Shown here in pieces: positions 23,925 to 59,892 of a stretch of 64,000 nt of DNA (position 1 is its first letter; the number at the start of each line of letters is the position of its first letter). The stretch is taken from the NCBI GenBank assembly GCA_977016875.1, contig CDRNST010000171.1, positions 868,001-932,000 of the forward strand, given 5' to 3'. The stretch comes from Pavona decussata. Its lineage: Eukaryota. The translations under genes and the position numbers were made by a program. The notes under the pieces are model-generated. The model had not been told where the DNA came from. It was given only the letters and a program-made list of their open reading frames with translations, and searched no databases.

Positions 23925-25129
23925 ATGAACGTAACTAACACCAAAGGATCGACGATCGCCAATTCTTCTTCCATGGCCAGGCCAATTTTCGTCTGCCCAC
24001 TGTTGCCGTACTTCATCTGGGACTTAAAAAACCCAACTTGGTTTCTCTCATTTCAGTTTGCAATCACCGTCACATCGATCGCTTGCCCGGCTACCACTGT
24101 TTTAAATATCTTAGTGATCGTAGCGGTGAAGAAAACAAAAGAGCTGAAAAAGAACTCAAACATTTTACTTTCGAGCCTGGCTGGAGCAGATCTTTTAGTG
24201 GGCGCCGTAGCCATGCCACTGGCAATCATTGTTTGTGCGTTAGCTCTCCAAGAACATTTAGTTGAGGATGTTATTTGTACCATAGATTACGTGAGTGATT
24301 CTGTCATATACACTGCTACTACTCTTTCAACTTTCCTTTTAGTTTTAATCGCTTGGGAGCGATATGTAGCGGTAACAAAATGGGCAGACTACAGGACTAT
24401 TGTCACAAGAGGCCGTATTAAGAAATACGCAAGAATAGCATGGCTCCTAATTTATTTTGGTGTATTCCCGTTCTTATAATACCAGCTTACCACTCTCAGC
24501 ACGAAGTCGTAGCCACTATAGATGTCGTCACAGCTGTCTTCGGCGGCCTTAAAATAGCTTTCTGCTTAGTTCTAATCGTATATTACTATATCATGGTTTA
24601 CCGCGGAGTACGTAAATGGAACCGAAGCCAAATCCGCCAAGTGCAAGCTTTGGTTAACGCCAAAGTAGAAACTAAGGCTGCTTATACGGCTTTCTTGTTA
24701 ACATTTTCGTTGGGTATTTCAATCGTTCCGGTAATTATGGTTTTAACCTTCGGGGGAGTTTGGCCTTTTCTGCGGAAGCGTTCGTTTTTAAGGTGGAGCA
24801 AGACAATGGTTTCGTTAAACTCTTTATTTAACCCTCTTCTCTACTGCTACAGAAACCGCGTTTTCAGGAAAGCAGTGTGGAAGTTGCTAAGATCACCGGG
24901 AAAATCTCCGAGAATCCAGCCGGTGGACACGGATCGCAAACAGCGATACATCAAGCGCGCAAGGTATGGCACTTCAACTGCATCGACAAACGAGAATAAT
25001 GGAGACCTTGAAACCGTTCAACAATGCCATTTCCGTTGGACTCGATCACGGTCTTGTGGTGCCCTTAAATGCTTAGAACAAGTTGGAAAAAGAGCAAGGG
25101 AGAGAGCTTCGTCCACTGCATCGTGTTGA
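23925..25129 (+). pseudogene. Class A (rhodopsin-like) GPCR copy 1, intronless, 1-bp frameshift at ~24449/24450
   Basis: ORFs 23925-24479 and 24440-25129 together give the 7TM protein (LAGADLLVG, WERY, NSLFNPLLY). CTAATTTATT here versus CTAGATTTATT in copy 3 shows one missing G. Could be an assembly error. Confidence 0.8.
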
Positions 25130-32316: not shown

Positions 32317-33552
32317 ATGAACGTTACTAATACCAAAGGATCGACGCTCGGCAATTCTTCTACCATGGCCAGGCCAATTTTCGTCTGCCCACTGTTGCCG
32401 TACTTCATCTGGGACTTAAAAAACCCAACTTCATTTCTCTCATTTCAGTTTGCAATCACCGTCACGTCGATCGCTTGCCCGGCTACCACTCTTTTAAATA
32501 TCTTAGTGATCCTAGCAGTGAAGAAAACAAAAGAGCTGAAAAAGAACTCAAACATTCTACTTTCGAGCCTGGCTGGAGCAGATCTTTTAGTTGGCGCCGT
32601 AGCCATGCCACTGGCAATCACTGTTTGTGCGTTAACTCTCCAAGAACATGAAGTTGAGGATGTTATTTGTACCATAGATTACGTGAGTGATACTGTCATG
32701 TATGCTGCTACCGGTATTTCAATTTCACTTTTAGTTTTAATTTCCTGGGAGAGATATGTAGCGGTAGCAAAATGGGCAGACTACAGGACTATTGTCACAA
32801 GAACCCGTATTAAAAAATACGCAAGAATAGCATGGCTCGTAGCTTCATTCTGGTACATTTCCGTTAGTATAAGACCAGTTTATCACCCTCCCTACGAAGC
32901 CATGGTCACTATGGATGTGGGAACCAGCCTTATGGGCGCTTTCTGCTTAGTTCTAATGGTATATTACTATATCATGGTTTATCGCGGAGTACGCAAATGG
33001 AACCGAAGCCAAATCCGCCAAGTGCAAGCTTTGGTTAACGCCAAAAAAGAAACTAAGGCCGCTAGTACGGCTTTCTTGCTAACAATTTCCGTCGGTATTT
33101 CGATCGTTCCGATAATTATGGTTTTCACCTTCGGTGAAGTTTGGCCTTCTCTACGGAAGAGTTCGCATTTCAGATGGAGCAAGACAATGCTTTCGTTAAA
33201 CTCTTTATTTAACCCTCTTCTTCACTGCTACAGAAACCGCGTTTTTAGGAAAGCAGTGTGGAAGTTGCTAAGATCACCGGGAAAATCTCCGAGAATCCAG
33301 CCGGTGGACACGGATGGAAACCAGCAAAACATCAAGCGAGCAAGGTATGGCAATTCCACTGTATCGACAAACGAGAATAAAGGAGACCTTGAAACCGTTG
33401 AACTGCGACATTTCCGTTGGACTCGATCACAGTCTTGCGGTGCCCTTAAATGCTTAGAACAAGTTGGACAAAAAGCAATGGACGGAGTGCTTCGTCCAGT
33501 GCATCGTGTTGAGCACACATTGCATGATTCTGTCGTATTCTCGGTTAGTTGA
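32317..33552 (+). CDS. Class A (rhodopsin-like) orphan GPCR copy 2, intronless, 411 aa
   Basis: Seven hydrophobic segments, TM1 LLN, TM2 LAGADLLVG, TM3 C...WERY, TM7 NSLFNPLLHCYRN, N-terminal NxT/S sequons. Confidence 0.9.
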   Translation: MNVTNTKGSTLGNSSTMARPIFVCPLLPYFIWDLKNPTSFLSFQFAITVTSIACPATTLLNILVILAVKKTKELKKNSNILLSSLAGADLLVGAVAMPLAITVCALTLQEHEVEDVICTIDYVSDTVMYAATGISISLLVLISWERYVAVAKWADYRTIVTRTRIKKYARIAWLVASFWYISVSIRPVYHPPYEAMVTMDVGTSLMGAFCLVLMVYYYIMVYRGVRKWNRSQIRQVQALVNAKKETKAASTAFLLTISVGISIVPIIMVFTFGEVWPSLRKSSHFRWSKTMLSLNSLFNPLLHCYRNRVFRKAVWKLLRSPGKSPRIQPVDTDGNQQNIKRARYGNSTVSTNENKGDLETVELRHFRWTRSQSCGALKCLEQVGQKAMDGVLRPVHRVEHTLHDSVVFSVS

Positions 33553-36018: not shown

Positions 36019-37200
36019 ATGAACGTTACTAATACCAAAGGATCGACGCTCGGCAATTCTTCTGCCATGGCCAGGCCAATTTTCGTCTGCCCACTGTTGC
36101 CGTACTTCATCTGGGACTTAAAAAACCCAACTTCGATTCTCTCATTTCAGTTTGTAATCACCGTCACGTCGATCGCTTGCCTTTTAAATATCTTAGTGAT
36201 CCTAGCGGTGAAGAAAACAAAAGAGCTGAAAAAGAACTCAAACATTCTACTTTCGAGCATGGCTGGAGCAGATCTTTTAGTGGGCGCCGTAGCCATGCCA
36301 CTGGCAATCATTGTTTGTGCGTTTGCTCTCCAAGAACATTTAGTTGAGGATGTTATTTGTACCATAGATCACGTAAGTGATTCTGTCATGTTCACTGCTA
36401 CTACTCTTTTAACTTTGCTTTTAGTTTTAATTGCATGGGAGCGATATGTAGCGGTAACAAAATGGGTAGACTACAGGACTATTGTCACAAGAGGCCGTAT
36501 TAAGAAATACGCAAGAATAGCATGGCTCCTAGATTTATTTTTGTTTATTCGCTTTCTTATAATACTAGCTTACCACCCTCGGCACAAAGTCATAGCCACT
36601 ATAGAGATCTTAAACAGCCTTCTAGCAGCGTTCTGCTTAGTTCTAATCGCATATTACTATATCATGGTTTATTGCGGAGTACGCAAATGGAACCGAAGCC
36701 AAATCCGCCAAGTGCAAGCTTTGGTTAAAGCCAAAGTAGAAACTAAGGCCGCTTATACGGCTTTCTGGTTAACAATTTCCGTTGGTATTTCGATCGTTCC
36801 GATAATTATGGTTTCCACCTTCGGGGAAGTTTGGCCTTCTCTACGGAAGAGTTCGTTTTTCAGGTGGAGCAAGACAATGGTTTCGTTAAACTCTTTATTT
36901 AACCCTCTTCTTCACTGCTACAGAAACCGCGTTTTCAGGAAAGCAGTGTGGAAGTTGCCAAGATCACCGGGAAAATCTCCGAGAATCCAGCCAGTGAACA
37001 CGGATCGCAACCAGCGATACATCAAGTCCTCAAGGTATGGCAATTCCACTGCATCGACAAACGAGAATAATGGAGACCTTGAAACCGTTGAACAGCGCTA
37101 TTTCCGTTGGACTCGATCACAGTCTTGCGGTGCCCTTAAATGCTTAGAACAAGTTGGACAAAGAGCAATGGAGAGAGCTTCGTCCACTGCATCGTGTTGA
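36019..37200 (+). CDS. Class A (rhodopsin-like) orphan GPCR copy 3, intronless, 393 aa
   Basis: Paralog of copies 1 and 2 with the same motifs; lacks PATT (12 bp) in TM1. Confidence 0.88.
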   Translation: MNVTNTKGSTLGNSSAMARPIFVCPLLPYFIWDLKNPTSILSFQFVITVTSIACLLNILVILAVKKTKELKKNSNILLSSMAGADLLVGAVAMPLAIIVCAFALQEHLVEDVICTIDHVSDSVMFTATTLLTLLLVLIAWERYVAVTKWVDYRTIVTRGRIKKYARIAWLLDLFLFIRFLIILAYHPRHKVIATIEILNSLLAAFCLVLIAYYYIMVYCGVRKWNRSQIRQVQALVKAKVETKAAYTAFWLTISVGISIVPIIMVSTFGEVWPSLRKSSFFRWSKTMVSLNSLFNPLLHCYRNRVFRKAVWKLPRSPGKSPRIQPVNTDRNQRYIKSSRYGNSTASTNENNGDLETVEQRYFRWTRSQSCGALKCLEQVGQRAMERASSTASC

Positions 37201-39537: not shown

Positions 39538-39815
39538 GGTAGAGGATTAGGACCTCTAAATGCCCTGGGGATTAGGACCCTGTGAGAAGATAAGGACCTC
39601 TCTGGATTTGGATTCCGTAGAGAGGATTAGGACCTCTAAATGCCCTGGGGATTAGGACCCTGTGAGAGGATAAGGACCTCTGGATTTGGATTCCGTAGAT
39701 AGGATTAGGACCTTTAAATGCCCTGAGGATTAGGACCCTGTGAGAAGATAAGGACCTCTGGATTTGGATTCCGTAGAGAGGATTAGGACCTCTAATGGCT
39801 TGGGGATTAGGACCC
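39538..39815. repeat. ~78-80 bp minisatellite, ~3.3 units, built from GGATTAGGACC submotifs
   Basis: Repeated GTAGAGAGGATTAGGACCTCTAAATGCCCTGGGGATTAGGACCCTGTGAGAAGATAAGGACCTCTGGATTTGGATTCC. Confidence 0.9.
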
Positions 39816-40458
39816 CAGAACAGGCTTAACACTCTCGTTGCCGAGCAACTCGACCTCGTAGCAAATATTTTCATCCACACTAGCGTCTTAGTATCGTTTT
39901 CACAAGTCCACACTAAAACGCTTGAAAACGATGAAACGACTGAGACCTGCGGTTGCGCGTGTGCATGTAGATGCTCGGATTTGAACTGAAAGGGAGGACG
40001 TGTGACGCTGTTTACGTCATCGTTTTCAGTCTGAAGTCTCCGTTTTTACCTGTCCACACTAAAAATAACGTGAAGTCGTCGCTTTTGAAACCGTTTTTGA
40101 CAGTCTCCGTTTTCATTCACGTTTTTTATGGATTTAGTGTGGATGATACTCAGAAAACGTATCAAAAAGTATTTGCACGAAGCACATTTCCTATTAGTGT
40201 GGACGGGGCCTTAGTTCTGTATGAGGGTCAATCAAGTCTCATGGAGCATCACCCATATTTACTTTCATAATTAATATAATACCCCGCTATAGCTTAATGG
40301 TTTAGTCTTAAAGAGGACCCTTCTGTAAGGAGAATTCCCTTCAGTGAATCACAAGTTTTTATACAGCGATGTTTGCATCCTCATTAAAAATTGTCATCAT
40401 TTAGTTATTTCAAGTGCTAGGCAATTCATGTAACCCGGCGCTTGGTCGCTTTAATTAA

Positions 40459-41306: not shown

Positions 41307-44300
41307 TCAGTCTAATGGAATATCTTCGTTAGTGCCTTTGCGTGGCTGAGCTGGTCTTCTGTCCAAACTATTCAAGAATCGACCACTAACCAATGTTCCA
41401 ATGCCAGCAGGACACAGGGCGTTCAGGTCAAAAGGATCTTCAGCGTCAGGTGGGTTAGCCATTCTTTCCACAATAGCTCCAACATTTTCCGGTGCAAAGT
41501 CGGGTTGCCTTATCATCCACTTCATAGATTGAACAACACCTTGAAATGCATCAAGCATACGACGCCTCATGTTTGATTCACTACTCATCAAAACCTTCAA
41601 ACGAAAACAATATATCATCACACAACACAATACAGAACAATCTTCATTTAACTTAACAGGGGGAGATTTACAAAGTTTTCGTTAAATGAATATAAAAAAG
41701 AAGAAGAAAAAATAACGGAAGCATGTTTAAAATTGTCATAAGAACTGTTTATCAATTTAGGTTTCAATTTGTATTTCTATCAAGAGTGTATCGCCTCATA
41801 AACGCCCGAGGCTGCATTCACAAAGAACATGTCCTTGATTTTGTTAGTGGTATTGTGACAGCTGTGAAATGTATCATGAACATCTGGTCTACAATTTAAT
41901 AGGAGAAAACTTTTTGGGGAAAACTAAATTAAAGTCTCAAAAAATCATAAAATTTATCAAGAATATTTACAGTTTACTAACCTTCAGGTGGACTAAGCAC
42001 CAGAAGACTTCAAACACTGTCAGGAAGTTTTCAGCTTGCATGTTGTGCTCTATTATCATCGCTTTGAGATCTTCCACCAACGACATTTCCAGAGGGTCGG
42101 ACATTTCGAGTGTGTGATCGTCATTGAAGGCCTTGTCGATCAGTTCCTGTCCGGTGGCAAGGTAAATATCTTTCAGGTCATGGAAACTATAACTTGTGTT
42201 TAAATTCCTTTCTTGATGAGTGGCGCCCACTTCAATAGGAACTGTTGACAGTTGTAGATTTGATTGGCTGTCATCATTGCCAATGGTTGAAGGTGCTTTC
42301 ATTTCTCCAGGTCTTTGTCCGACAGTTTCCCCAAGTGGATCGCGCCTTTCCATTTCAGCTAGTTTTGCAGCTTCTTCACTCTGGATTAACTTGGCGAATT
42401 TCATCGGATCTTCTATGATCTCCACAACCTTTTCAGCCAAAGCGTCAAGAATCTCTGGGCTTTCAATATAATCTTCACAGAACAGGTTATATGAACTGAC
42501 AAAGAAATGCCGCAAGTTCTTTTCTATAAGAGATTCCAAAAGGTTCCCGAAGAGTTTCATCACGCACTCAGCTCTGTTGCTTTCGGTCCACATTTCGGCA
42601 CCGGTTTCTTCAATCGTTTGCAGAAAGATGTTTTTCAGATGGAAAGTCACCAAACCCTTTTGTTCCTTAGGACCTTTAAGATGGGCTCGATGATATTTCT
42701 TTAGGCAGCGGTAACATTCTCGCTGAACATCATTCATCTCTTGGCTTAACAGGTATTCTGCATGTGAAAAGGAGATTCTGAAGTCGCATTCCGGATTGCC
42801 CCCTTTCTTTGGTGGCTTGACAACCAAATGGAATCCATTTTGAACCACCTTGTGGACTATGTCTGGCGAGGGCCATTTGCGCTCTCGTTTTATCCACTCC
42901 AGTGCGACCTGTGGCCATCCTGGGCATCTTAAAGCAGGAACTAAATCACACCCAGCCACAATGGGTGCCTTCGGAGGGTCCTTCGATTTGGGGGAAGCTT
43001 TGGCTTCTTCACTAACTGGTTTGAAAAGGTGTTCGATGATGTAGTCTCTTTGGCTTGAAATGGTTTTTAAATCTTCGTATCCATCGTTCGGATTGCGTTC
43101 TAGGACCACAACCCTTGAAGGATCGGGCTCCACTGCTGAGGGTTGTTGTTCTGCGTTTGGCTCACTTTGGCTCTCACTCTTGGGCTTTTCGTGTTCGTTC
43201 TTATTCTGCCCACTCTTGTCGTTCGTAGTTGACTGCTGTGGCATCAGATTTCCTGAAGACTTGTCAAAATTCTGCAATGTTTCCTCCAATTTCTCTTGGT
43301 TTGAAGTGGAGGTAAAGTCTTCAGTAGACTGCTGGTTTTCATCAAAATTTTGTGCCATGACAGACGTTTGTTCCTCGCTTCTTTCGCTTTCGTTGTCGTG
43401 ACAGTTTTCTGGCGTGACATTTTGCATACATTTTCGCTCTGCTGCTTCCGCCGAGTGATCATCCCTTCTTCCGCTTTCGTTTTGAGTTTGACTTTCAATC
43501 TCGCCCATTCTGTCTCTGAAGGTTTTAGCGCGTTCGCTGAAAACTAACTCTTGAAACAGAAGAGGAAATGCTTCTGGTTGGCACAGCAGACCTCTCTCAC
43601 AGTATGACATTTGCACCTCATTAGCAAAGTCGATGTATTCCTTGAAGACATCGGCATGTTCTTTTGAATAGTTGTTTCCACTGGATCTGCAGAACTCATG
43701 GGCAAGCCATTCCCATTCCGCGAAGTCGATATTGGTTAATGTCTCCGGGGTTTTCATCCTTTCGGCCAACTCAGAAATTGAACCATATGACTGGGTTAAA
43801 TCAATTTGTATAGCTGGACAATATTCGTTGTTCTTCCATTGCCAAACACCAGTGTCCCACTTTTCTCGAGACGCGATCTGTAGTGTACGGTTTAAAAGAT
43901 CGATCAGATGTGGCGCTGAACTCCCATAAATTGCAGAGTGGAAATTCTTCAAGGCTGAAGTGGCCACGTACTCAGTGCCCTGCACAAGGCAGGATCGCAA
44001 AACGGGGTGATCGACACCTTTGATTTTCACGTGCATTGGGTTCTCCGAATATTCGATCATTTCGTCGTGGATCATCCGATCATCGGATTTAGGACAGATG
44101 ACTATATCTAAATCACCAACATCATCGGGTGCTGGGCTCTTTAAATCTTCAGCCGCACTCCCGTAGGTTTGAAGTATCATACAAATGTCAAACCTTTGGC
44201 TAGAGAACGCCGACAGCTGCTGTAACAAGAGGGCCACGCAATGTTCCGTGTGTTTCTTCCATAATTCGCCTTCCTTTCCTCGCTCTCCCATCGACTTCAA

Positions 44301-44348
44301 GATGGAGTTTAGATCCTGAGTGTTTTGGTCTTCCTCTTTTGACGCCAT
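41307..44348 (-). CDS. cGAS-like receptor (Mab-21/cGLR nucleotidyltransferase) copy B, 884 aa; exons 44348-41982 and 41594-41307
   Basis: NTase motifs YGSAAE (G63/S64), GDLDIV (D79/D81), CDLVPAL (D468), then WP..A.EW..R.R.WP, FHLVVK, FRISFSHAE, HLKN, RHFFV..YNLF of the Mab-21 family. Phase-0 GT-AG intron 41981-41595. Confidence 0.92.
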
Positions 44349-44419
44349 TTTGTAAAATCGAAATGGAGATTTTCAGTTAAATGTCCCACATTGTTAGAGG
44401 AAATTTATGAGAACGTAGC

Positions 44420-44438
44420 TTTCGATTTCGGTTTTCGA
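44420..44438 (-). promoter_or_regulatory. ISRE/IRF-E-like motif upstream of cGLR B
   Basis: Minus strand reads CGAAAACCGAAATCGAAAG (GAAANNGAAA), ~70-90 bp upstream of the ATG. Confidence 0.6.
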
Positions 44439-47577: not shown

Positions 47578-50500
47578 TTTATTTGTACTCACTCTTGCTC
47601 AAAAATAAAATTACAACAAAGAAAATATTAAAAATAATAATTGGAGTACTGGCTGCCTTGAATAACCATAGGGGCTAGCGGAGCCAGGCAGCCAGTTGGC
47701 ATCAGTATTAAATAGAAATAAAATACAGGTCAGCAAGAAAGCTGAAGCACAAATGCACACATAAAAAGAAAAAGAGGAGAGGAAAAGGCTAATTCTACGC
47801 TGTAAGGGAAGTCTAGAATAGTTAAATTTAAATATAAATACAAAACTGTAATATAAGAAGAGCACGCAATAGCTATGACAACTAATAACAAGCTATATAT
47901 TAAACTATAACAGAAAAAAACATTAAGGCTTTGAAAGGTGACAAAACTAAACCAAAGACTTATTTACAGTGAATTTGCTAGAAAAATTACAAGAAACTAA
48001 CAATCTTTGACAAGATCGTCCGTATCAGTAATAAGTCGACTTGTGTTCTTCAGCAGAGAGCTTTTTTAACATTGATAGATCGGACTACTTAAAAACTTCG
48101 CATATGTAGGTGACCACGACGACATAAAAAATTTCATAGCATGACTTCCTTGAATGATTAAGAATAATCCAGCACTTCCTAGAATAGAACATTCCTCAAC
48201 TTTCTTTATTACACTAGAGCTTTATGGAGTCTTTCAAATGAATCCTGAATGTTACAATACATTGGGCAATGACGAAATCTTGGGAGTTTCACGCGACACT
48301 TTTTGTGCTTAAAGGGGAAGTATCATGGGGTTTTTGGTATCTTTTGTAAAAAATGATGAAATAAGACCTTCAAGTGATCAGCTGCCAAATAATTCTAGAA
48401 TGACAAGAGAACAAAAATTAACTCAATTCTCGAAAGGAACAACTCATGGTTTGTTCTAGCGCATTTTGGAAACAAAGATGCGAGAACTTGAAAAACATTA
48501 GCCTAACATTTTTCAAGTTTCAATCCATACTGGCCTACTCTGTCTCTGGCCAGAGGCGCTAATCAACAGCTTTATTGCACTGGGGTGATACTTTATTACA
48601 AACTTGACAATTATTTCTTTGTTTCTGCTGACAGACAAACATTTTTGGGTTTTGAAATGACAGCAAATTTGCGTGATACTTCCCTTTTAATTTTTAACAC
48701 GACTCTTATGTCATAAATTGAGTGGCCAGAAATGCTGCTGTCCGGCAAATCATTTATTTCCTTAAAAGCCTGTTCTGGAGTCAGCTTAACTACATGACTC
48801 ACTGTGGTAAGCGTTAAACACGTACAGCTAAACCTGATTGCCTTGATAACTTGCAATCAAGGCAAATGATGCTAACAGCGATTGAAACATCGATCTCTCC
48901 TCATTTATAAGTCCTTGCGTGGAACGCTAAGTTGTGGCCGCCATTCAAACGAAAATTCTTCACCGACACTTTCCTGAAATATTGTTTGTTTCTCGGACTT
49001 TTACGAGATTAAATTTAGTCCTCTTCGTAAATTTTGATTTTGGAAATAAATTTGAGTGGTATAATCATATTTCCTAGACTGTTTTGAATTCTTATAGAGC
49101 CGTTTGACAAGGTAGCAAACTAACCTTCAAATAGATCGTGTCCCAGAAGACTTCAAACGTTCTCAAGAACTCCCCAGCTTGAATGTTGTGCTTTGCAGTT
49201 ATCTCTCTGAGATCCTTCACCAAGGACGTTTCCAGAGGGTCGCGGATTTGATGTGCGTGGTCGTCGTTGAAGGCCATATCGACCAATTCCTGGCAGATTG
49301 CTAGGTAAATATCTTTCAGGTCATGGTAACGAGGACTTGTGTTTGAATTACTTCCTTTTTGTGTACAGGTGCCCTTTTCCGTGGGAACAGTAGAAGGTTC
49401 AAGCTTTGTTTGGACCTCATCATTGCCTCTCGATGAAACTACGTCCATTCTGCCATGACTTTTTCCTGAAGCAGTGTTTGCAGCTAGGTTGCTGTTTGGG
49501 GCGCATTTTTCTTTTTCCGCTTTCTTTGCAGCGTCTTCTTCTTCAATCAACTTGGCGAATTGAATCGGATTTTCTATGATGTGCGCAGCTTTTTCAGCCA
49601 AGGATCCCAGAATTTCGGTGTTTTCAATATAATCTACACTGAACAGATTATATGATCTAACAAAGAAATGTCGCAAGTTCCGAGTCACAAGTGCTTCCAG
49701 GAGGTTTCTCAAGAGCTGCATCATGCACTCAGTTCTGTTGCTTTCGGTCCACATTTCGGCACCGGTTTCTTCAATCGTTTGCAGAAAAAGGTTCTTCAGA
49801 TGAAACGTCACCAAACCCTTTGGATCTTTGGAAAGATAAGCTCGATGATATTTCTTCAGACAGCGGTAACAGTCGCGTTGGACTTCGTTTAACTCTTGGC
49901 TTAACAGGTATTCTGCATGGGAAAAGGAGATTCTGAAGTCGCATTCTGGATTGCCTCCCTTCTTTGGTGGCTTGACAACCAAATGGAACCCATCTTGAAC
50001 TACCTTGTGGACTATGTCTGGCGAGGGCCATTTGCGCTCTCGTTTTATCCACTCCAGTGCGACCTGTGGCCATCCTGGAGATCTCAAAGCAGGGACTAAA
50101 TCAAACCCACCCAGCATACGATTATCGTTCAGTTCAGGAGTTCCTTTGGTTTCCTCAGTGCCTGTTTTGAAAACATGCTCAGAGATTAGGTCAGTTATGC
50201 ATGAAAGGGACTTGAAATCGTCGTGATCCCTTGGGTTTTTGTTATGACGAACACTTTGTAGAATCCCTGTTGGGGGTTGCTGCCTTTCGTCTGACACACT
50301 TTGGCTGTCTCTCTCGAGGTCTTCATATTCGTTATTACTGTGATCACTGTTGTCACTCGCACCATTGTTTTCTTCAGATGATTGTTTTGACATCCGATCT
50401 CCCGAAGAACAGGCAGGATCCTGTAATGTAACTCCCACTGGCAATGTTCGGCTTGAACGGGATCTTAAGTCTCCACCAGACCTCTGAAAGCCAACAAAAT

Positions 50501-51506
50501 TTGGTGGCGTGACAGGTGACTCATCTTTGGACGGTAAACTTCCTTGTGACTCGTTTTCCTTACTTCCTTCACTTTCAATTTCTTGACAGTTTTCTGACGT
50601 TTCCAGGAAACAGCTTTCACTCTTTCTGCTTTCGTTCTTTCTTCGTTCTTCGATATTGCGAACTCTCTCTGCCAATTTTTTGGTGCGCTCGCTGAAAACT
50701 AGTTCTTGTAGCAGAAGGGGAAACGTTTGTGGTTTGCATAGCAAGCCTTTTTCAAAGTGGGAGGATTGCACTTCTCTTGCAAAGTCGAGATATTCGTTGA
50801 CTACTTCAGCGTGCTCTCTTGAATAATTTCCGCCTTTTAATTTGCAGAAAGTATTGGCTAACCATTCCCATTCCACTGTGTCAAGATTGGTCAACGTTTC
50901 CGAGTGTTTCTGCGTTTCCAATACCCCAGACAAAGGACCATCCGAGTGGGTGTAATTAAGTTGTAGAGCTGGACAAGCTTCGTTGTTCTGCCATTGCGCG
51001 GAAACTTTACCCATCTCCCCTCGAGACGCGAAGTCAAGTATACGAGTTGCAAAGTCGACCAAATGTGGGGAAGATTTCCCGTAAATTTCAGAATGGAAAT
51101 TCTTCAAGGCTGAAGTGGCCACGTACTCAGTGCCCTTCACCAGGCAGGATCGTAAAACGGGGTGATCGACACCTTTTATTTTTACGTGCATTGGGTTCTT
51201 GGCGGAATATTCGATCATTTCGTCGTGAATCATCAAATCATCGGATTTGGGACAGATGATTATATCTAGATCACCAACATCATCGGGTGCTAGGCTCTTT
51301 AAATCTTCAGCTGCACTCCCATAGAGTTGAAGGACCACGCAATTATCGAACTGTCGGCTCAAATACTCATTTAATTTCTTTAACAGGTAGCTTGGGCAAT
51401 GTTCAGTATAATCTTTCCATAGCTCGCCTTCCTTTCCTCGCTCTCCCATCAACTTGAAGATGAGATTTAGGTCCCGGGTTTTTTCGTCTTCTTCTCTCGA
51501 CGCCAT
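47196..51506 (-). CDS. cGAS-like receptor (Mab-21/cGLR) copy C, 888 aa; exons 51506-49125 and 47480-47196
   Basis: Same motifs (YGSAAEDL, GDLDII, FDLVPAL, FRISFSHAE, RHFFVRSYNLF). Phase-0 intron 49124-47481. Exon 2 VWMNTEPNMRRRMLD...DDIPLD. Confidence 0.92.
47517..47576. repeat. (TCAA)n microsatellite in the cGLR C intron
   Basis: Directly visible. Confidence 0.95.
48309..48690. mobile_element. TTAA-flanked MITE in the cGLR C intron
   Basis: TTAAAGGGGAAGTATCA...TGATACTTCCCTTTTAA inverted ends. Confidence 0.6.
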
Positions 51507-56170: not shown

Positions 56171-58566
56171 TCAGTCTAATAGAATGTCTTCGATGTCAAC
56201 CTTTTGTGGCTCAGCTGGTTTCAGACTCTTGAGCATTCTGCGAAATAGCTGCAACCCTAGATTAGCAGGTAATACGTGGCTGAAGTCGAAAGGATTTTCA
56301 GCAGTGCAATCAAGCATTTTGGCCAATGCTGCGCCGTTCTCTCCAAGTACAGCTTTGTCTTGCCTTAACATGTACTTCAGGACCTCTACGACACCTCGTA
56401 TTCCGTCAAGCATTCGGAGTCTCATTTTCGGTTCAGTGCTTAACCAAACCTTGGTGTAAATCATCTTCCAGCCAGACTCAAATATCATGAAGAGCTCGTC
56501 AGCGTTGATATTGTGGATTCGTCCGATTTCTCTAAGCTCTTCCACCAATGACCGTTCTAGAGGGTCCAGAGTTTCAAGCCTGCAATCAGCGACGTTGGCT
56601 GCCATATTGATCATCTCTTTGCTGGTAGCGAGGAAGATATCTTGTAGGTCATGGTATCGATAACTGGTCCTTGAACTGCTTCCTTTTTGCTTTGCTTCTG
56701 CCTGCTTGCCTTGCTCCTCGTCACTGCGTTTGGCTGGATCCTTTACGATTTCTTTATGTCCATGTCTTGTGGCAGATGCTGCAGATGAGGTCGCCTCGCT
56801 GCTGAGAATGTATTTTGTTTCATTTTTGTCTTGCTTCGTGTCTTGACCACTAATCAACTCTTTGGCAAATTGCAACGGATTTTTCATGATCTGTTCAGTT
56901 TTTTCAGCCAAAGATTCCAGAATCTCGGGGCATTCAATGTAATCGACACAGAACAAGTTGTATGATCTCACAAAGAAATGTCGCAAATCCTTCTTTTTAA
57001 GAGCTTCCAAAAGATTCGCGAGTAGCTTCATCATACAGGTGGCTCTGTTGCTTTCAGTCCACATCTCGGCACCGGTTTCTTCAATCGTTTGCAAGAACAT
57101 ATTCTTCAGGTGAAATGTCACCAAACCCTTTGGGTCTTTGGAAAGATAGGCTCGATGATAATTCTTCAGACAGCGGTAACAGTCGCGCTGGATTTCGTTT
57201 AACTCTTGGCTTAACAGGTATTCTGCATGTGAAAAGGAGATTCTGAAGTCGCAATCCGGATTTCCACTGTTCTTTGGAGGCTTAACTACCAAGCGGAAAC
57301 CTCCTTGAACGACTTTGTCGACTATGTCAGGCGAGGGCCATCTACGCTCTCGCTCAATCCACTCCAGGGCAACGTTTGGCCATCCTCGGGATCTTAATGC
57401 TGGGACAAAATCAATTCCCTCAACTATCTCATTGAACTGCGCTTCGTCGATGTTCTTAAATTCCGCTTCCTTAAGGGGATCTTCGGTTGATTCAGCAATC
57501 AATCCGACCATATATTGAAACAAATGTTCAGTTATTCGTGGAAAGCTCTTCACTTCATTCTCTTCTTCGTCTGGATTACGTGGCTTATCTTTACTGACCA
57601 GCTGAGCGATCGCGAAGGAATGTGGCCCAGTTTTCTGCTCATTTTGGTTTCCACCAGTGTCTCTGTTCTTCTCATCTTCACTCTGATACGCCATAATCCC
57701 TTTTGTTTCAGTCCCTAGGATTTTCGTTCTCGGTTCGCTGTTGCTCTCTGGTAAACTCTCGATATCTTCAAGTCGGGCTTTGAGCTTTTCAGCTCCCCTC
57801 CAAACCTCGGAGACCATCTGAGAAATATCACTTGGATAGCTGTTGAACGCAGAAGCGAAGACTCCATTCATTGACTGAATCATGTCGTCGAAAATTCTTG
57901 CCTTTTCTTTAGTGTAATCAGTTCCACTGGTGGTACAGTTCCAATGTGCCAGCCACTCCCATCCAGCTGGATCCAAAGTAAGAGGCAGTTGCAAATTTTC
58001 AGGCCCGTCTTTGATGATCAGCTCCTCATAGTCTCTCCAACTGGGAAGAGAGCTAGAACAAGAGAGGGTCGAAGCAAAGTTATCAAAAAAGGTGAAGGTT
58101 AAAGCTGGGCTTGTTCCACTAGTGTGGAACTGCCCAGTGTTTAGTGCCAAATCTTCTTGAGGTGCTATCTGCTGAAGTATACCGGTATAACAGTCCCCAC
58201 CATAAATTGCATGATGGAAATTCTTTACAGCTGAGGTCGCCACGTACTCGGTACCTTCTTTAAGGCAGGACTGCAACACCGGATGATCGACTCCCTTGAT
58301 TCTGACGTGCATTGGGTGCTCGGGTAAATATTCGATCAACCTGTCATGCATCATCAAATTATCTGAATTCGGAAAGATCATGATGTCCACATCTCCAGGT
58401 TTATTGGGGTTATAACACATCACTTCTTCGACTGAGCTTCCAGAAGGTTCGAATATGATGTCATTTGAACACAGTTTAGCAAAAAGCTGATCTCCTTTCC
58501 TCGTTGTCCGAGAGCCTTGAAGATAAAGTTGAGTTCCTGAGTTTTTGAATCCTGTGTCCCTGCCAT
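56171..58566 (-). pseudogene. cGAS-like receptor copy D, intronless, frameshifted near the 5' end (~58490)
   Basis: ATG at 58566 gives MAGTQDSKTQELNFIFKALGQRGKE, homologous to the B/C N-termini, then runs to a stop at 58420. The homologous EPSGSSVEE...GDVDIMIFP...IDFVPAL...DILLD* lies in another frame, whose first ATG is downstream of the GS motif. About 20 codons are missing relative to B/C. Confidence 0.78.
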
Positions 58567-58643
58567 TTTACAGGAACTAAAGTATCTCTGACATTCGACG
58601 GGTTTAGAATTAGAGGTTGTGATTTGCACAGTTAAGCCTGTCA

Positions 58644-58674
58644 CATTTATAGCAGTTTATGTTTCGGTTTTCGA
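58644..58674 (-). promoter_or_regulatory. IRF-E-like motif plus TATA box upstream of cGLR D
   Basis: TCGAAAACCGAAA (58662-58674, identical to the B promoter motif) and CTATAAATG (58644-58652) on the minus strand. Confidence 0.55.
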
Positions 58675-59892
58675 GACTATATACGGATTGTGCTTAAACC
58701 GAGTCGTGAGTCCGTCACAGGTTAACTGCAATGGTCCTGAAACGAAATCTTCAAAGTGATACACGTAGCCTTTTACACAAGGCTTTCATTTATCTGTCGA
58801 AAACAAGTTGCGACGCCAATCAGACAAAAGTGCTGAGTATCCAATGTCACTTTTGGTTTTCTCATTTCTGAGTTATTTATGGATGATTTTGCTGGTTCAT
58901 AATAAAATAAGACTGACAGTTTTCTAGAATTTTGTTTTCTAAAGTTTTTGGATCAGTGATGCTTTGAAACTTGATCAGGTAACCTAATAGTCGGCACATT
59001 ATGCACACAAGGCAGACAAGTCCATATCGACCGCAGGACACGTCTCATATGTATTTTTGCCCGGTTGGCACCGGTAGAAAATAGACGGGGCTATCTCGAG
59101 ATTTGCTACTGCTTGAGATACGTACATCGATATTTCCCGCTATCAGAATTTACTTTTAAAAACAGGAAACAGGAAAGAAAATGTGAAAAGAACTATTTGA
59201 TAGAAAAGAATGGTACCTTATTAGAGACATAATGAATTCGAGCCACGAAAATGAAACAAGGACTGAATCTGCATGGTACGTCCATAGTCGAGGGCTTCCG
59301 GTTAAAAGCTATTTCCATTTCCCCCCTTCCCGCCTCGAATACGATCCCCGGGTGCTTAACTATTCGAGGTTTTACGATAATTCAGTAAATCAGGACCGGA
59401 AACCAATCCGGGGGACTATTCAATTCAATTCTTTATTCACACTATATATACACGAGAACATTTACATACAATTCATATTATAAATAGAAGAAAGAAAGAA
59501 CAGAGGAGTAACATTAAGCCATGAAGAGATATGGTTCATGTGCGTGCAATGTTCAAAGTAGCAAAAGCTTTCTAGTTGGTCACCGCCAAGGTCAAGTAAA
59601 TGGCATTATAAAATTCATTAGTTATTCATTAAAGTTATGACCAATCAGTAGGTAGAATTTAAGTCACATGTACACCTCCGTAAACCCCAATACAAATCAA
59701 TGAATTATTAAACAGGAGAATTAACTTTTGATACAAACTCCTGCTCAGCTAATTAGTATTCATTAACTTTTAATACAGATCTCTACAGATTAAAATACAA
59801 AACACAATACATTCAATTTATTGTTTCAATTCACAAGTACGAAAACATATTCGCGTCCGATCTGTATGGGCTCGCCTTCGGCTCGCCATTGT

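What the first reader, a model, noticed from the sequence alone, without database searches (positions are those of the whole stretch)
42960..43796. ~280-aa insertion splitting the catalytic beta-sheet of the nucleotidyltransferase
Seen: in B the PAIQI strand (aa ~178-183) and the CDLVPAL strand carrying the third catalytic Asp (D468) are ~280 aa apart. From recalled family alignments, these strands in cGAS/Mab-21 proteins are normally joined by a short hairpin. The insert has a conserved helical part (WEWLA..C...G..Y.(K/R)E.A..F/V in B, C and D), a hypervariable acidic/Ser-rich linker, and a conserved I.EH(L/V)F motif just before re-entering the core. Inference: it could be an autoinhibitory or ligand-sensing module, or a pathogen-protease bait region controlling activation.
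Basis: partly seen in the sequence, partly recalled or inferred. Interest (0 to 1): 0.75.

Follow-up and report, generated by a model that had tools for sequence, protein, structure and literature searches.

The report
Orphan domain inserted in coral cGLR
A family of stony-coral cGAS-like immune enzymes carries a real, translated ~280-residue insertion (a small helical domain found nowhere else plus a floppy acidic tether) in the hairpin just before a catalytic residue; the family is already catalogued, but this split architecture has not been described and its function is unknown.

Summary
Gene B (window 41982-44348, minus strand, plus a 3' exon at 41310-41594) is a stony-coral cGAS-like receptor. 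The PAIQIDL strand (aa 178-186) and the IVAGCDLVPALR strand carrying D468 are 276 residues apart. Canonical paralogs in the same genome, Sp-cGLR1, MB21D2 and cGAS join these two strands with 3-10 residues.

An AlphaFold model superposes on human cGAS over 332 of 355 residues (Z 28.7), with about 310 residues looped out. G63, S64, D79, D81 and D468 are invariant in 78 homologs.

The insert has three parts:
- A ~110-aa helical module. It folds confidently alone, is under purifying selection (omega 0.36), has no fold or sequence relative, and occurs only inside this clade (40 clusters among 1.84 billion proteins).
- A 76-240-aa acidic disordered tether under relaxed constraint (omega 0.67-0.82).
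- A short conserved (E/Q)H-hydrophobic-(F/L) helix before re-entry into the core.

The insert is not an intron. The frame is kept across the family, and B/C length differences preserve the frame.

The whole protein is acidic (pI 4.9), whereas canonical paralogs have pI ~9-10. A family member (XP_022779765.1) was screened by Li et al. 2023 and is not listed as active.

The function, regulatory or partner-binding, is inferred and not shown. I rate this a new variant of a known kind, of moderate interest.

The parts
41982..44348 (-). Gene B, exon 1 (aa 1-789). The mechanical ORF 41967-44348 reads 4 codons (VSKL) into the intron.
   Evidence: ORF. Donor CTGAAG|GTTAGT at 41982/41981. Pfam Mab-21 at aa 468-533 and Mab-21_C at aa 542-639.
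41310..41594 (-). Gene B, exon 2 (95 aa, ends ...DIPLD; stop at 41307-41309). It is homologous to the uninterrupted C-terminus of paralog D.
   Evidence: Acceptor ...TTTCGTTTGAAG| at 41595. Alignment with D. Translation check.
43800..44348 (-). N-terminal spine helix and N-lobe of the nucleotidyltransferase (aa 1-183). It holds the G63-S64 activation-loop motif (44157-44162) and D79-L-D81 (44106-44114).
   Evidence: These residues are invariant in 78 homologs. hhalign against canonical paralogs gives E 3.8e-5 and aligns YGSAAEDLK with TGSVYEGLK and GDLDIVI with DEVDVMVV. The VIA superposition on cGAS spans model residues 14-657.
43791..43817 (-). Strand PAIQIDLTQ (aa 178-186), the last core strand before the insert.
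   Evidence: DSSP strand E180-186. Near-identical GPAIQIDI in canonical paralog L009. A179 is invariant.
42954..43799 (-). The insertion as a whole (aa 184-465, 282 aa). By DSSP, aa 187-462 are looped out.
43473..43790 (-). Helical module (aa 187-292; helices 191-198, 209-222, 229-251, 258-270 and 272-292). It contains WEWLA..C...G..Y.KE.A.
   Evidence: pLDDT is 80-94 in the full model. Folded alone it gives pLDDT 87 and pTM 0.77. omega is 0.32-0.36. It is exclusive to this clade. No fold match was found.
43074..43472 (-). Acidic, Ser/Thr- and Gln/Asn-rich disordered tether (aa 293-425).
   Evidence: pLDDT is below 50 for aa 293-421. Composition is D+E 22%, S+T 18%, Q+N 20%, net charge -16. 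In the family its length is 76-240 aa and its median charge -11. omega is 0.67-0.82.
42999..43073 (-). Re-entry segment (aa 426-450) with the conserved amphipathic helix. IIEHLF is aa 437-442 (43023-43040).
   Evidence: Helices 427-432 and 436-442 have pLDDT ~71-76. The family-wide motif is hydrophobic-hydrophobic-(E/Q)-H-hydrophobic-(F/L)-G, 23-37 residues before the third Asp. It is also present in paralogs L019 and L029, which lack the helical module.
42927..42962 (-). Strand IVAGCDLVPALR (aa 463-474) carrying the third catalytic acid D468 (codon 42945-42947).
   Evidence: DSSP strand E463-474. D468 aligns with the catalytic Asp strand of mouse cGAS and Sp-cGLR1. G466 and D468 are invariant.
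42399..42953 (-). C-terminal part of the NTase core plus the Mab-21_C lobe (aa 466-650).
   Evidence: Pfam. PDB sequence hits to Sp-cGLR1 at 1e-16, or 1e-26 with the profile. omega 0.17.
50109..50957 (-). The homologous insertion in paralog C (aa 184-466 of ORF 49092-51506).
57419..58093 (-). The homologous, shorter (225 aa) insertion in paralog D (aa 111-335 of ORF 56171-58423).

Best explanation
SHOWN.
- B, C and D in this window, and A just upstream, are stony-coral cGAS-like receptors (cGLRs) with a complete cGAS-type core and an intact catalytic set (G63-S64, D79-x-D81, D468).
- The beta-hairpin leading into the third-Asp strand has been expanded from about 3-10 residues to 229-379 residues.
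- The expansion is translated and has three parts: a ~110-aa helical module that folds alone and is selectively constrained; a 76-240-aa acidic, fast-evolving disordered tether; and a short conserved (E/Q)H-hydrophobic-(F/L) helix 23-37 residues before the catalytic Asp.
- The helical module has no detectable relative outside this clade, so it is a lineage-specific domain of scleractinian corals.
- Proteins of this family are strongly acidic (core pI ~5.8), unlike the basic, nucleic-acid-type canonical cGLR paralogs of the same genome.

INFERRED.
- The insert leaves and re-enters the sheet five residues from D468. A five-residue beta-strand spans about 17 A, so the module is tethered at the rim of the catalytic cleft.
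- I think it most likely acts as a cis-acting accessory domain. It could be a lid or regulator of the active site, or a docking surface for a protein or other non-nucleic-acid activator.
- The acidic tether would mainly provide slack, and possibly electrostatic auto-inhibition.
- The enzyme would stay a nucleotide-second-messenger synthase, gated by something other than dsRNA or dsDNA.
For: Architecture:
- AF2 model with strands 167-173 and 180-186, then helices 191-292, then disorder 293-421, then helices 427-442, then strand 463-474.
- VIA-align to human cGAS 7ftu gives Z 28.7, rmsd 3.4 A, 332 of 355 residues aligned, model range 14-657.
- Canonical paralogs, Sp-cGLR1, cGAS and MB21D2 have 3-10-residue hairpins.
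- hhalign of the N-part against canonical paralogs gives E 3.8e-5.

Catalytic competence:
- G63, S64, E67, D79, D81 and D468 are invariant in 78 sequences.

The insert is coding:
- The frame is kept in all 78 homologs despite lengths of 229-379 aa.
- There are 0 in-frame stops, and the B/C length differences preserve the frame.
- omega for the whole insert is 0.57 [0.38-0.92].

The module is a constrained domain:
- omega is 0.36 [0.19-0.70] against an ortholog and 0.32 against C.
- Folded alone it gives pLDDT 87 and pTM 0.77.

The module is specific to this lineage:
- The profile finds only 40 clusters among 1.84e9 proteins. All seven hits that span from the module to the C-terminus carry the module upstream of the Mab-21 third-Asp strand; of three shorter hits, one shows it too and two have no Pfam domain.
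- It occurs at only 7 loci in the 602-Mb genome.
- No fold match in PDB, BFVD or the ESM Atlas except the family itself.
- No internal duplication.

The activator is probably not a nucleic acid:
- B has pI 4.9 and the family core a median pI of 5.8, against 9-10 in seven of eight canonical paralogs.
- Li et al. report pI above 8.5 for nucleic-acid-sensing cGLRs and predict cationic ligands for acidic ones.
- Family member XP_022779765.1 was cloned with its insert and is not listed among the active enzymes, with or without poly I:C and dsDNA.

Precedent:
- RET1 and RET2 TUTases carry an accessory domain inserted inside the Pol-beta-type catalytic domain, and it affects enzymatic properties (PMC5159558).
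Against: - No functional data exist. The blank Note entry for sample 12 could equally mean poor expression.
- I could not read model coordinates or PAE, so the position of the helical module relative to the active site is unknown.
- A three-chain docking test gave no verdict.
- Close paralogs carry ~55-aa (L021, L026) or ~150-aa (L019, L029) inserts without the helical module, and still have intact ORFs and conserved cores. In the core tree they are interleaved with module-bearing genes. The module is therefore dispensable for at least some family members.
- The tether's omega (0.67-0.82; CI reaches 1.36) cannot be told from neutral evolution.
- No RNA evidence was available.
Confidence: 0.55

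Rival explanations
1. Tolerated loop expansion. This hairpin is a structurally permissive site where low-complexity sequence accumulated. The helical part is conserved only because it must stay soluble and folded, and the insert does not regulate the enzyme.
For: - Insert length varies continuously across the clade. The distance from DxD to the third Asp is ~100-115 aa in canonical paralogs, 135, ~167, ~245-250, and 327-483 in others.
- The tether evolves nearly neutrally.
- Paralogs without the helical module persist as a young tandem cluster with intact ORFs.
- No known fold or motif was found in the module.
Against: - The helical module has omega 0.32-0.36, close to the N-lobe of the core.
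- It is retained in both complex (Porites) and robust (Orbicella, Oculina, Desmophyllum) corals.
- It keeps a constant ~100-115-aa size while the tether varies threefold.
- The (E/Q)H-hydrophobic-(F/L) helix is conserved at a fixed distance from the catalytic Asp.
Confidence: 0.25
2. Protease bait or decoy. A pathogen or caspase-type protease cleaves the exposed tether, releasing the helical lid and switching the enzyme on or off.
For: - A 130-residue exposed, disordered segment lies between two halves of a catalytic sheet.
- It evolves quickly.
- From memory, not checked here: human cGAS is reported to be cleaved by caspase-3 at the equivalent Asp, D319.
Against: - No conserved cleavage motif was seen. 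The tether shows only weak conserved islands.
- omega does not exceed 1, so there is no arms-race signature.
- Cutting within the hairpin would leave two non-covalently associated halves of the sheet, and the consequence for activity is unknown.
Confidence: 0.07
3. Catalytically silent scaffold. The insertion disrupts the active site, and the protein signals, if at all, through protein-protein contacts, like Mab21L1/2.
For: - The family member in the published screen is not listed as active.
- The protein is strongly acidic and has long extra C-terminal domains.
Against: - The GS motif, D-x-D and the third Asp are invariant across 78 sequences at 40-90% identity.
- The predicted core superposes on active cGAS over 332 of 355 residues.
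- Core omega is 0.17-0.28.
Confidence: 0.08
4. Unrecognised intron or annotation artefact. The 846 nt are removed from the mRNA.
For: - The gene does contain one intron elsewhere (41595-41981).
- No transcript evidence was available. The Logan and TARA contigs I fetched look genomic; one is labelled METAG.
Against: - There are zero in-frame stops, against 6-20 in the other frames.
- B/C length differences preserve the frame.
- No donor/acceptor pair could excise the insert without also removing the catalytic strand.
- The frame is kept in 78 homologs with different insert lengths.
- omega is below 1, with a constrained and confidently foldable helical domain.
Confidence: 0.02

Closest known systems
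cGAS and animal cGAS-like receptors (cGLRs), e.g. Sp-cGLR1 of Stylophora pistillata (PDB 8GJY) and human cGAS
   Same: - Same bilobed Mab-21/cGAS fold: Z 28.7 to human cGAS with 332 of 355 residues aligned; Sp-cGLR1 is the best sequence hit at 1e-16, or 1e-26 with the profile.
- Same GS activation loop, D-x-D and third Asp.
- Same coral-type expansion in tandem clusters.
   Different: - 276-282 residues instead of 3-6 in the hairpin before the third Asp.
- The spacing from DxD to the third Asp is 386 residues, against the X50-90 used to define the family.
- Core pI is 5.7, against above 8.5 for nucleic-acid sensors.
- A long extra C-terminal region of about 230 aa, including a separate exon.
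- The N-lobe is too divergent for Pfam or PDB sequence profiles.
XP_022779765.1 (S. pistillata LOC111321209), sample 12 of the 140-enzyme screen of Li et al. 2023, and XP_020626019.1 (Orbicella faveolata) in their Table S2
   Same: Both are members of this same insert-bearing family. XP_022779765.1 shows the RPYGSAAEDLK, GDMDIMVFP, SGPAFTIDC and GVEYTREHASAF motifs followed by an S/E/Q-rich linker. XP_020626019.1 is P0097 of my alignment.
   Different: These are orthologs or paralogs in other species. In that paper they are only listed. The word 'insertion' does not occur in the text. The CDD hit for the Orbicella protein is flagged N-terminally incomplete. Sample 12 has no activity label.
Human MB21D2 (PDB 7LT1), an orphan cGLR
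   Same: - Second-best PDB sequence hit.
- Shares the GWP..A..W motif after the third-Asp strand.
- Has a non-basic surface, no known ligand and a C-terminal helical extension.
   Different: MB21D2 has an 8-residue hairpin at this site (TIISIIL-GVGSSRML-YDIVPVV). It has no helical module and no acidic tether there.
Trypanosome RNA-editing TUTases RET1 and RET2, with a 'middle domain' inserted in the catalytic domain
   Same: This is an analogy of design. An accessory folded domain is inserted within the Pol-beta-type nucleotidyltransferase catalytic domain, packs on the enzymatic module and influences enzymatic properties (PMC5159558).
   Different: No homology. The inserted domain there is RRM-like, not helical, and has no long disordered tether. 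The enzymes act on RNA 3' ends, not in second-messenger synthesis. Whether the insertion point is equivalent was not tested.

Membership tests
cGLR / cGAS-Mab-21 nucleotidyltransferases (criteria of Slavik 2021 and Li 2023) | Predicted structural homology of the whole catalytic domain to cGAS | tested here: met
   VIA-align gives Z 28.7, rmsd 3.4 A and 332 of 355 residues of human cGAS aligned, with model range 14-657. Foldseek alone aligns only the C-terminal half.
cGLR / cGAS-Mab-21 nucleotidyltransferases (criteria of Slavik 2021 and Li 2023) | G[S/G] activation-loop motif | tested here: met
   Y62-G63-S64; G63 and S64 are invariant in 78 homologs. hhalign aligns them to TGS of canonical paralogs.
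cGLR / cGAS-Mab-21 nucleotidyltransferases (criteria of Slavik 2021 and Li 2023) | [E/D]h[E/D] metal-binding pair on the strand after the GS loop | tested here: met
   D79-L-D81 is invariant and aligns to DEVDVMVV of canonical paralogs.
cGLR / cGAS-Mab-21 nucleotidyltransferases (criteria of Slavik 2021 and Li 2023) | Third catalytic acid on the equivalent strand | tested here: met
   D468 aligns with the catalytic Asp strand of mouse cGAS (isvDiilAL) and Sp-cGLR1 (sVDLtlgi). It is invariant.
cGLR / cGAS-Mab-21 nucleotidyltransferases (criteria of Slavik 2021 and Li 2023) | Spacing of X50-90 between the acid pair and the third acid | tested here: not met
   There are 386 residues between D81 and D468. 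The criterion is quoted. This is a spacing rule of thumb rather than a structural requirement, and a family member is nevertheless in the published cGLR tables.
cGLR / cGAS-Mab-21 nucleotidyltransferases (criteria of Slavik 2021 and Li 2023) | Pfam Mab-21 (PF03281) and Mab-21_C (PF20266) above the gathering score | tested here: met
   52.4 and 52.6 bits against a cut-off of 24.1. PF03281 matches only profile positions 125-193, because the insert and the divergent N-lobe break the match.
cGLR / cGAS-Mab-21 nucleotidyltransferases (criteria of Slavik 2021 and Li 2023) | Ligand-dependent synthesis of a cyclic dinucleotide signal | not testable with these tools
   The only indirect datum is that family member XP_022779765.1 is not labelled active in the published screen.
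Nucleic-acid-sensing cGLRs (subgroup) | Basic protein (pI above 8.5) with a positively charged ligand groove | tested here: not met
   The B core has pI 5.65, the full protein 4.92, and the family core a median of 5.83. Seven of the eight canonical paralogs have pI 8.9-10.1. The threshold is from Li et al.. Surface electrostatics of the groove itself were not computed.

The most novel reading that the evidence does not exclude
The insert turns a cGLR into a new type of gated sensor. The clade-specific helical module sits as a lid on the catalytic cleft, held by the (E/Q)H-hydrophobic-(F/L) helix and the acidic tether. It is released by binding of a cationic or protein ligand, or by proteolytic cutting of the tether. 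Activation would then be controlled at the active-site face, not through the canonical spine and ligand-groove face used by cGAS, OAS and Drosophila cGLR1. The natural short-insert paralogs would be constitutively 'unlidded' versions.
Probability: 0.12. Interest if true: 0.8.

Novelty: new variant of a known kind. Interest (0 to 1): 0.5.

Why it matters
- cGLRs are now seen as a major family of animal pattern-recognition receptors, but most of them, including human MB21D2, have no known ligand.
- This clade keeps every catalytic residue, is acidic rather than basic, and has a constrained orphan domain built into the hairpin next to the catalytic Asp. It is a candidate for a different mode of control or a different class of ligand.
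- The published motif rule (X50-90) and domain searches see only half of the enzyme. Such split cGLRs are therefore easy to mis-annotate, or to clone and test without noticing the architecture.
- The same genome supplies natural comparators for experiments: canonical, ~55-aa-insert, ~150-aa-insert and full-insert paralogs.
- It remains a lineage-specific elaboration of a known enzyme with no functional data, so its interest is moderate.

Tried and rejected
1. Pfam on the N-part, the helical module, the tether, the C-terminal helices and exon 2 separately gave nothing meaningful.
2. An N-part family profile searched against PDB sequences gave no Mab-21 hit. Homology of the N-lobe rests on the fold and on hhalign against canonical paralogs (probability only 71%).
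3. The helical module alone was searched with Foldseek PDB (best E 2.3), VIA-align wide (best Z 6.8, generic helical hits; the tool notes that Z below about 13 means little for helical bundles), BFVD (best E 1.9) and the ESM Atlas by shape (only its own family at TM 0.73; next a TetR-like hit at 0.55). The Atlas search by features gave no usable hit.
4. hhalign of the module against the other five segments of the protein found no internal duplication (all probabilities 5% or less).
5. Complex prediction with N-lobe, C-part and helical module as three chains gave no verdict (scores 0.55, 0.01, 0.06). This is no evidence for or against docking.
6. A motif search of the published Table S3 for AEWEW and DFRISF found nothing. 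That was a false negative, caused by motif variants and truncated rows, and was corrected.
7. RNA evidence was sought from the Logan and TARA contigs carrying P0036 and P0037. One is labelled a metagenome scaffold, and the one 3' end read shows no poly(A). They show uninterrupted single-ORF genes but say nothing about splicing.
8. Pairwise omega against the 90%-identical ortholog was too noisy to use. That script broke off before the last three rows, and the intervals are very wide.
9. Monophyly of the module-bearing genes on the core tree is neither shown nor rejected (p-AU 0.17). Gene conversion in the core may blur the tree (dS 0.34-0.42 in the core against 0.7-1.3 elsewhere between B and C).
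10. The joined two-exon protein and an insert-deleted core were never sent to any search or fold tool. Exons were searched apart, and only composition (pI and charge) was computed on the joined strings inside a script. The AF2 model covers the exon-1 ORF only.
Full report
WHAT IS THERE

The window is eukaryotic. The best named relatives are all stony corals: Oculina, Porites, Orbicella and Desmophyllum. It corresponds to G000:C171:868001-932000 of a 602-Mb assembly.

Three tandem Mab-21/cGAS-like genes lie on the minus strand:
- B: ORF 41967-44348
- C: ORF 49092-51506
- D: ORF 56171-58423

A fourth gene, A, lies on the plus strand and straddles the window start.

B has a second exon. The donor CTGAAG|GTTAGT is at 41982/41981 and the acceptor at 41595. 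Exon 2 (41310-41594) encodes 95 aa ending in DIPLD, and is homologous to the uninterrupted C-terminus of D. The protein is therefore 884 aa. The last four codons of the mechanical ORF are intronic read-through. The exons were searched separately. The joined model was not sent to any search or fold tool; only its pI was computed in a script.

In an alignment of 78 homologs at 38-91% identity, G63, S64, E67, G78, D79, D81, A179, G466 and D468 are invariant.

Pfam sees only the second half of the NTase domain, profile positions 125-193, starting at D468. PDB sequence searches likewise align only from about aa 445-468 onward. D468 pairs with the catalytic Asp strand of mouse cGAS and of the coral enzyme Sp-cGLR1.

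The N-terminal 183 residues have no Pfam or PDB sequence match. Two results place them as the N-lobe:
- A profile-profile comparison with ten canonical cGLR paralogs of the same genome aligns YGSAAEDLK with TGSVYEGLK and GDLDIVI with DEVDVMVV. The support is modest (E 3.8e-5, probability 71%).
- The AlphaFold model (pLDDT 72, pTM 0.69) superposes on human cGAS with Z 28.7 and rmsd 3.4 A over 332 of 355 residues, spanning model residues 14-657. The complete cGAS core is therefore present, and about 310 residues of that span are extra.

DSSP places the extra residues between strand 180-186 (IQIDLTQ) and strand 463-474 (IVAGCDLVPALR).

The equivalence is visible by eye. Canonical paralog L009 reads GPAIQIDI-NSKRTREKLL-SIDLVPCF. 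Sp-cGLR1 reads AVTLKIS-KDGREY-SVDLTLGI. Human cGAS reads SPAVTLLIS-EKI-SVDITLAL and MB21D2 reads TIISIIL-GVGSSRML-YDIVPVV. The hairpin is normally 3-10 residues, and here it is 276.

THE INSERT IS NOT AN INTRON

- The insert frame has no stop in 846 nt, while the other five frames have 6-20.
- The B and C inserts are both 846 nt. Their aligned gaps are multiples of three, apart from a 7+2 pair 19 nt apart that sums to 9.
- The only strong donors inside the insert pair with acceptors that lie beyond the catalytic strand.
- All 78 homologs keep the frame through inserts of 229-379 aa. These include single-ORF genes on coral metagenome contigs.
- omega for the whole insert against a syntenic ortholog is 0.57 [0.38-0.92].
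- No RNA data were available, so this conclusion rests on evolutionary evidence.

ANATOMY OF THE INSERT

1. Helical module, aa 187-292.
   - It has five helices with pLDDT 80-94 in context.
   - Folded alone with 76 homologous segments it gives pLDDT 87 and pTM 0.77.
   - Its length is nearly constant at about 100-115 aa.
   - omega is 0.36 [0.19-0.70] against the ortholog and 0.32 against paralog C. The combined core is at 0.21.
2. Disordered tether, aa 293-425.
   - pLDDT is below 50.
   - Composition is D+E 22%, S+T 18%, Q+N 20%, net charge -16.
   - In the family its length is 76-240 aa, its median charge is -11, and identity falls to 15-34% where the core keeps 68-81%.
   - omega is 0.67-0.82, not distinguishable from 1.
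3. Re-entry segment, aa 426-462.
   - It holds a short helix, IIEHLF in B.
   - Family-wide the motif is broader: hydrophobic-hydrophobic-(E/Q)-H-hydrophobic-(F/L)-G, often followed by T.TE. In the 37 sequences with the strict motif it lies 23-37 residues before the third Asp.

THE HELICAL MODULE IS AN ORPHAN

No Pfam match was found. There is no significant fold match in PDB, BFVD or the ESM Atlas apart from its own cnidarian Mab-21 cluster, and no feature-space neighbour. It is not an internal duplication.

A profile of the module searched against 1.84 billion representative proteins finds only 40 clusters. I checked ten of these. The seven that span from the module to the C-terminus all carry the module upstream of a Mab-21 third-Asp strand. 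Of three shorter ones, one shows the same arrangement and two have no Pfam domain and look like fragments. In the coral's own genome the module occurs at 7 loci: four on this contig, one further full-length gene, and two that look broken. The genome has at least 70 Mab-21 hits in total.

EVOLUTIONARY CONTEXT

All large-insert genes form one strongly supported clade (100/99) apart from canonical cGLRs. Inside that clade the hairpin is a hot spot. The distance from DxD to the third Asp takes these values:
- ~100-115 aa in canonical paralogs
- ~167 aa in a young tandem cluster of at least 11 genes on contig C120 (insert ~55 aa, no helical module)
- ~245-250 aa in L019 and L029 (acidic linker plus the EHLF-type helix, no helical module)
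- 327-483 aa in module-bearing genes

The short forms are interleaved with module-bearing genes from several coral species. Monophyly of the module-bearing set is neither shown nor rejected (p-AU 0.17). Secondary loss of the module in the short forms is at least as likely as a late gain. Either way, the module is not needed to keep the core intact. The EHLF-type helix is shared more widely than the module.

CHARGE

B is very acidic: pI 4.92 and charge -51 for the full protein, with a core pI of 5.65. The family core has a median pI of 5.8. Seven of the eight canonical paralogs have pI 8.9-10.1.

Li et al. report that dsRNA- and dsDNA-sensing cGLRs have pI above 8.5. They predict that acidic cGLRs respond to positively charged, non-nucleic-acid ligands.

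WHAT IS ALREADY KNOWN

The family is catalogued. XP_020626019.1 (Orbicella; P0097 here) is in Table S2 of Li et al. 2023, with its Mab-21 hit flagged N-terminally incomplete. XP_022779765.1 (Stylophora) is sample 12 of their 140-enzyme screen. It was cloned with the insert and carries no 'active' label.

The text of that paper never mentions an insertion. Its stated selection motif requires X50-90 between the acid pair and the third acid, which this family violates with X = 386. Full-text searches found no description of the architecture. This covers only the library at hand.

Trypanosome TUTases RET1 and RET2 are a design precedent. An accessory domain inserted within the Pol-beta-type catalytic domain affects enzyme properties.

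MECHANISM (INFERRED)

The insert leaves the sheet at residue 186 and re-enters at 463, five residues before D468. It is therefore anchored within roughly 17 A of the metal site, at the active-site edge of the sheet.

I consider a cis-acting accessory domain the most likely role: a lid or regulator, or a docking platform for a non-nucleic-acid activator. The reasons are:
- a constrained module that folds on its own
- a conserved re-entry helix at fixed spacing from the catalytic Asp
- invariant catalytic residues
- an acidic surface
- the absence of reported activity with nucleic acids

I could not inspect coordinates or PAE, and a docking test gave no verdict. The position of the module is therefore unknown.

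The main rival is a tolerated loop expansion without a regulatory role. The protease-bait idea has no specific support. The intron idea is effectively excluded.

VERDICT

The structural interpretation is supported and the functional interpretation remains open. This is a new variant of a known kind (a cGLR with a lineage-specific domain inserted in the catalytic hairpin), of moderate interest.

Noticed in passing
window 44418-44436 (-), about 70-90 nt upstream of the ATG of gene B: An ISRE/IRF-like run, GAAAACCGAAATCGAAAGC, lies in the putative promoter of B. A window-wide scan for GAAANNGAAANNGAAA with one mismatch gave 6 hits against 2.1 expected (3 of 100 shuffles reached 6), so it is not clearly enriched. 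No equally clear run was seen in the 300 nt upstream of C.
   Followed up: partly
window 58424-58700 (-), upstream of ORF D (56171-58423): The N-terminus of paralog D looks damaged. A start MAGTQDSKTQELNFIFKALGQRGKE lies in a different frame from the main ORF. The stretch that should form the spine helix is shortened, while an SGSS(VEE) GS-like motif remains in the main frame. D may be a pseudogene or have an unrecognised small intron.
   Followed up: partly
B against C, whole genes (41967-44348 and 49092-51506): Synonymous divergence between B and C is uneven. dS is 0.34-0.42 in the two NTase core segments but 0.7-1.3 in the N-terminal helix and the insert. This suggests gene conversion that homogenises the catalytic core between tandem paralogs.
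   Followed up: no
G000:C120:2709786-2770130 (loci L019, L021, L023, L024, L026, L028-L030): A second tandem cluster holds at least 11 close paralogs (43-47% identical to B). Their inserts at the same hairpin are short (~55 aa) or intermediate (~150 aa), and they lack the helical module. They are natural 'deletion variants'.
   Followed up: partly
Li et al. 2023 Table S3, sample 13 (XP_021346622.1, scallop Mizuhopecten yessoensis): By eye there are about 260 residues between GDWDILV and KDFIPAL, including a helix-like stretch and an S/E/N-rich stretch. Another cGLR lineage may have a large expansion in the same region. My module profile did not detect it, so it would be independent.
   Followed up: no
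window 32317-33552 (+), 36019-37200 (+), 24440-25129 (+): Rhodopsin-family GPCR genes (7tm_1; the third is weak or partial) flank the cGLR cluster. The GPCR-cGLR neighbourhood is conserved in a related coral assembly (L034).
   Followed up: no
window 65-751 (+) and G000:C171:866293-868700 (L037): Gene A, a fourth module-bearing paralog on the opposite strand, straddles the window start. It has DxD at aa 92, WEW at aa 226, EHLF at aa 468 and the third Asp at aa 497.
   Followed up: partly
window 39572-39913 (-): An ORF made of a repeated unit of about 23 aa (GPNP.YGIQIQRSLSSHRVLI.RAF.) points to a tandem DNA repeat between the GPCR genes and gene B.
   Followed up: no
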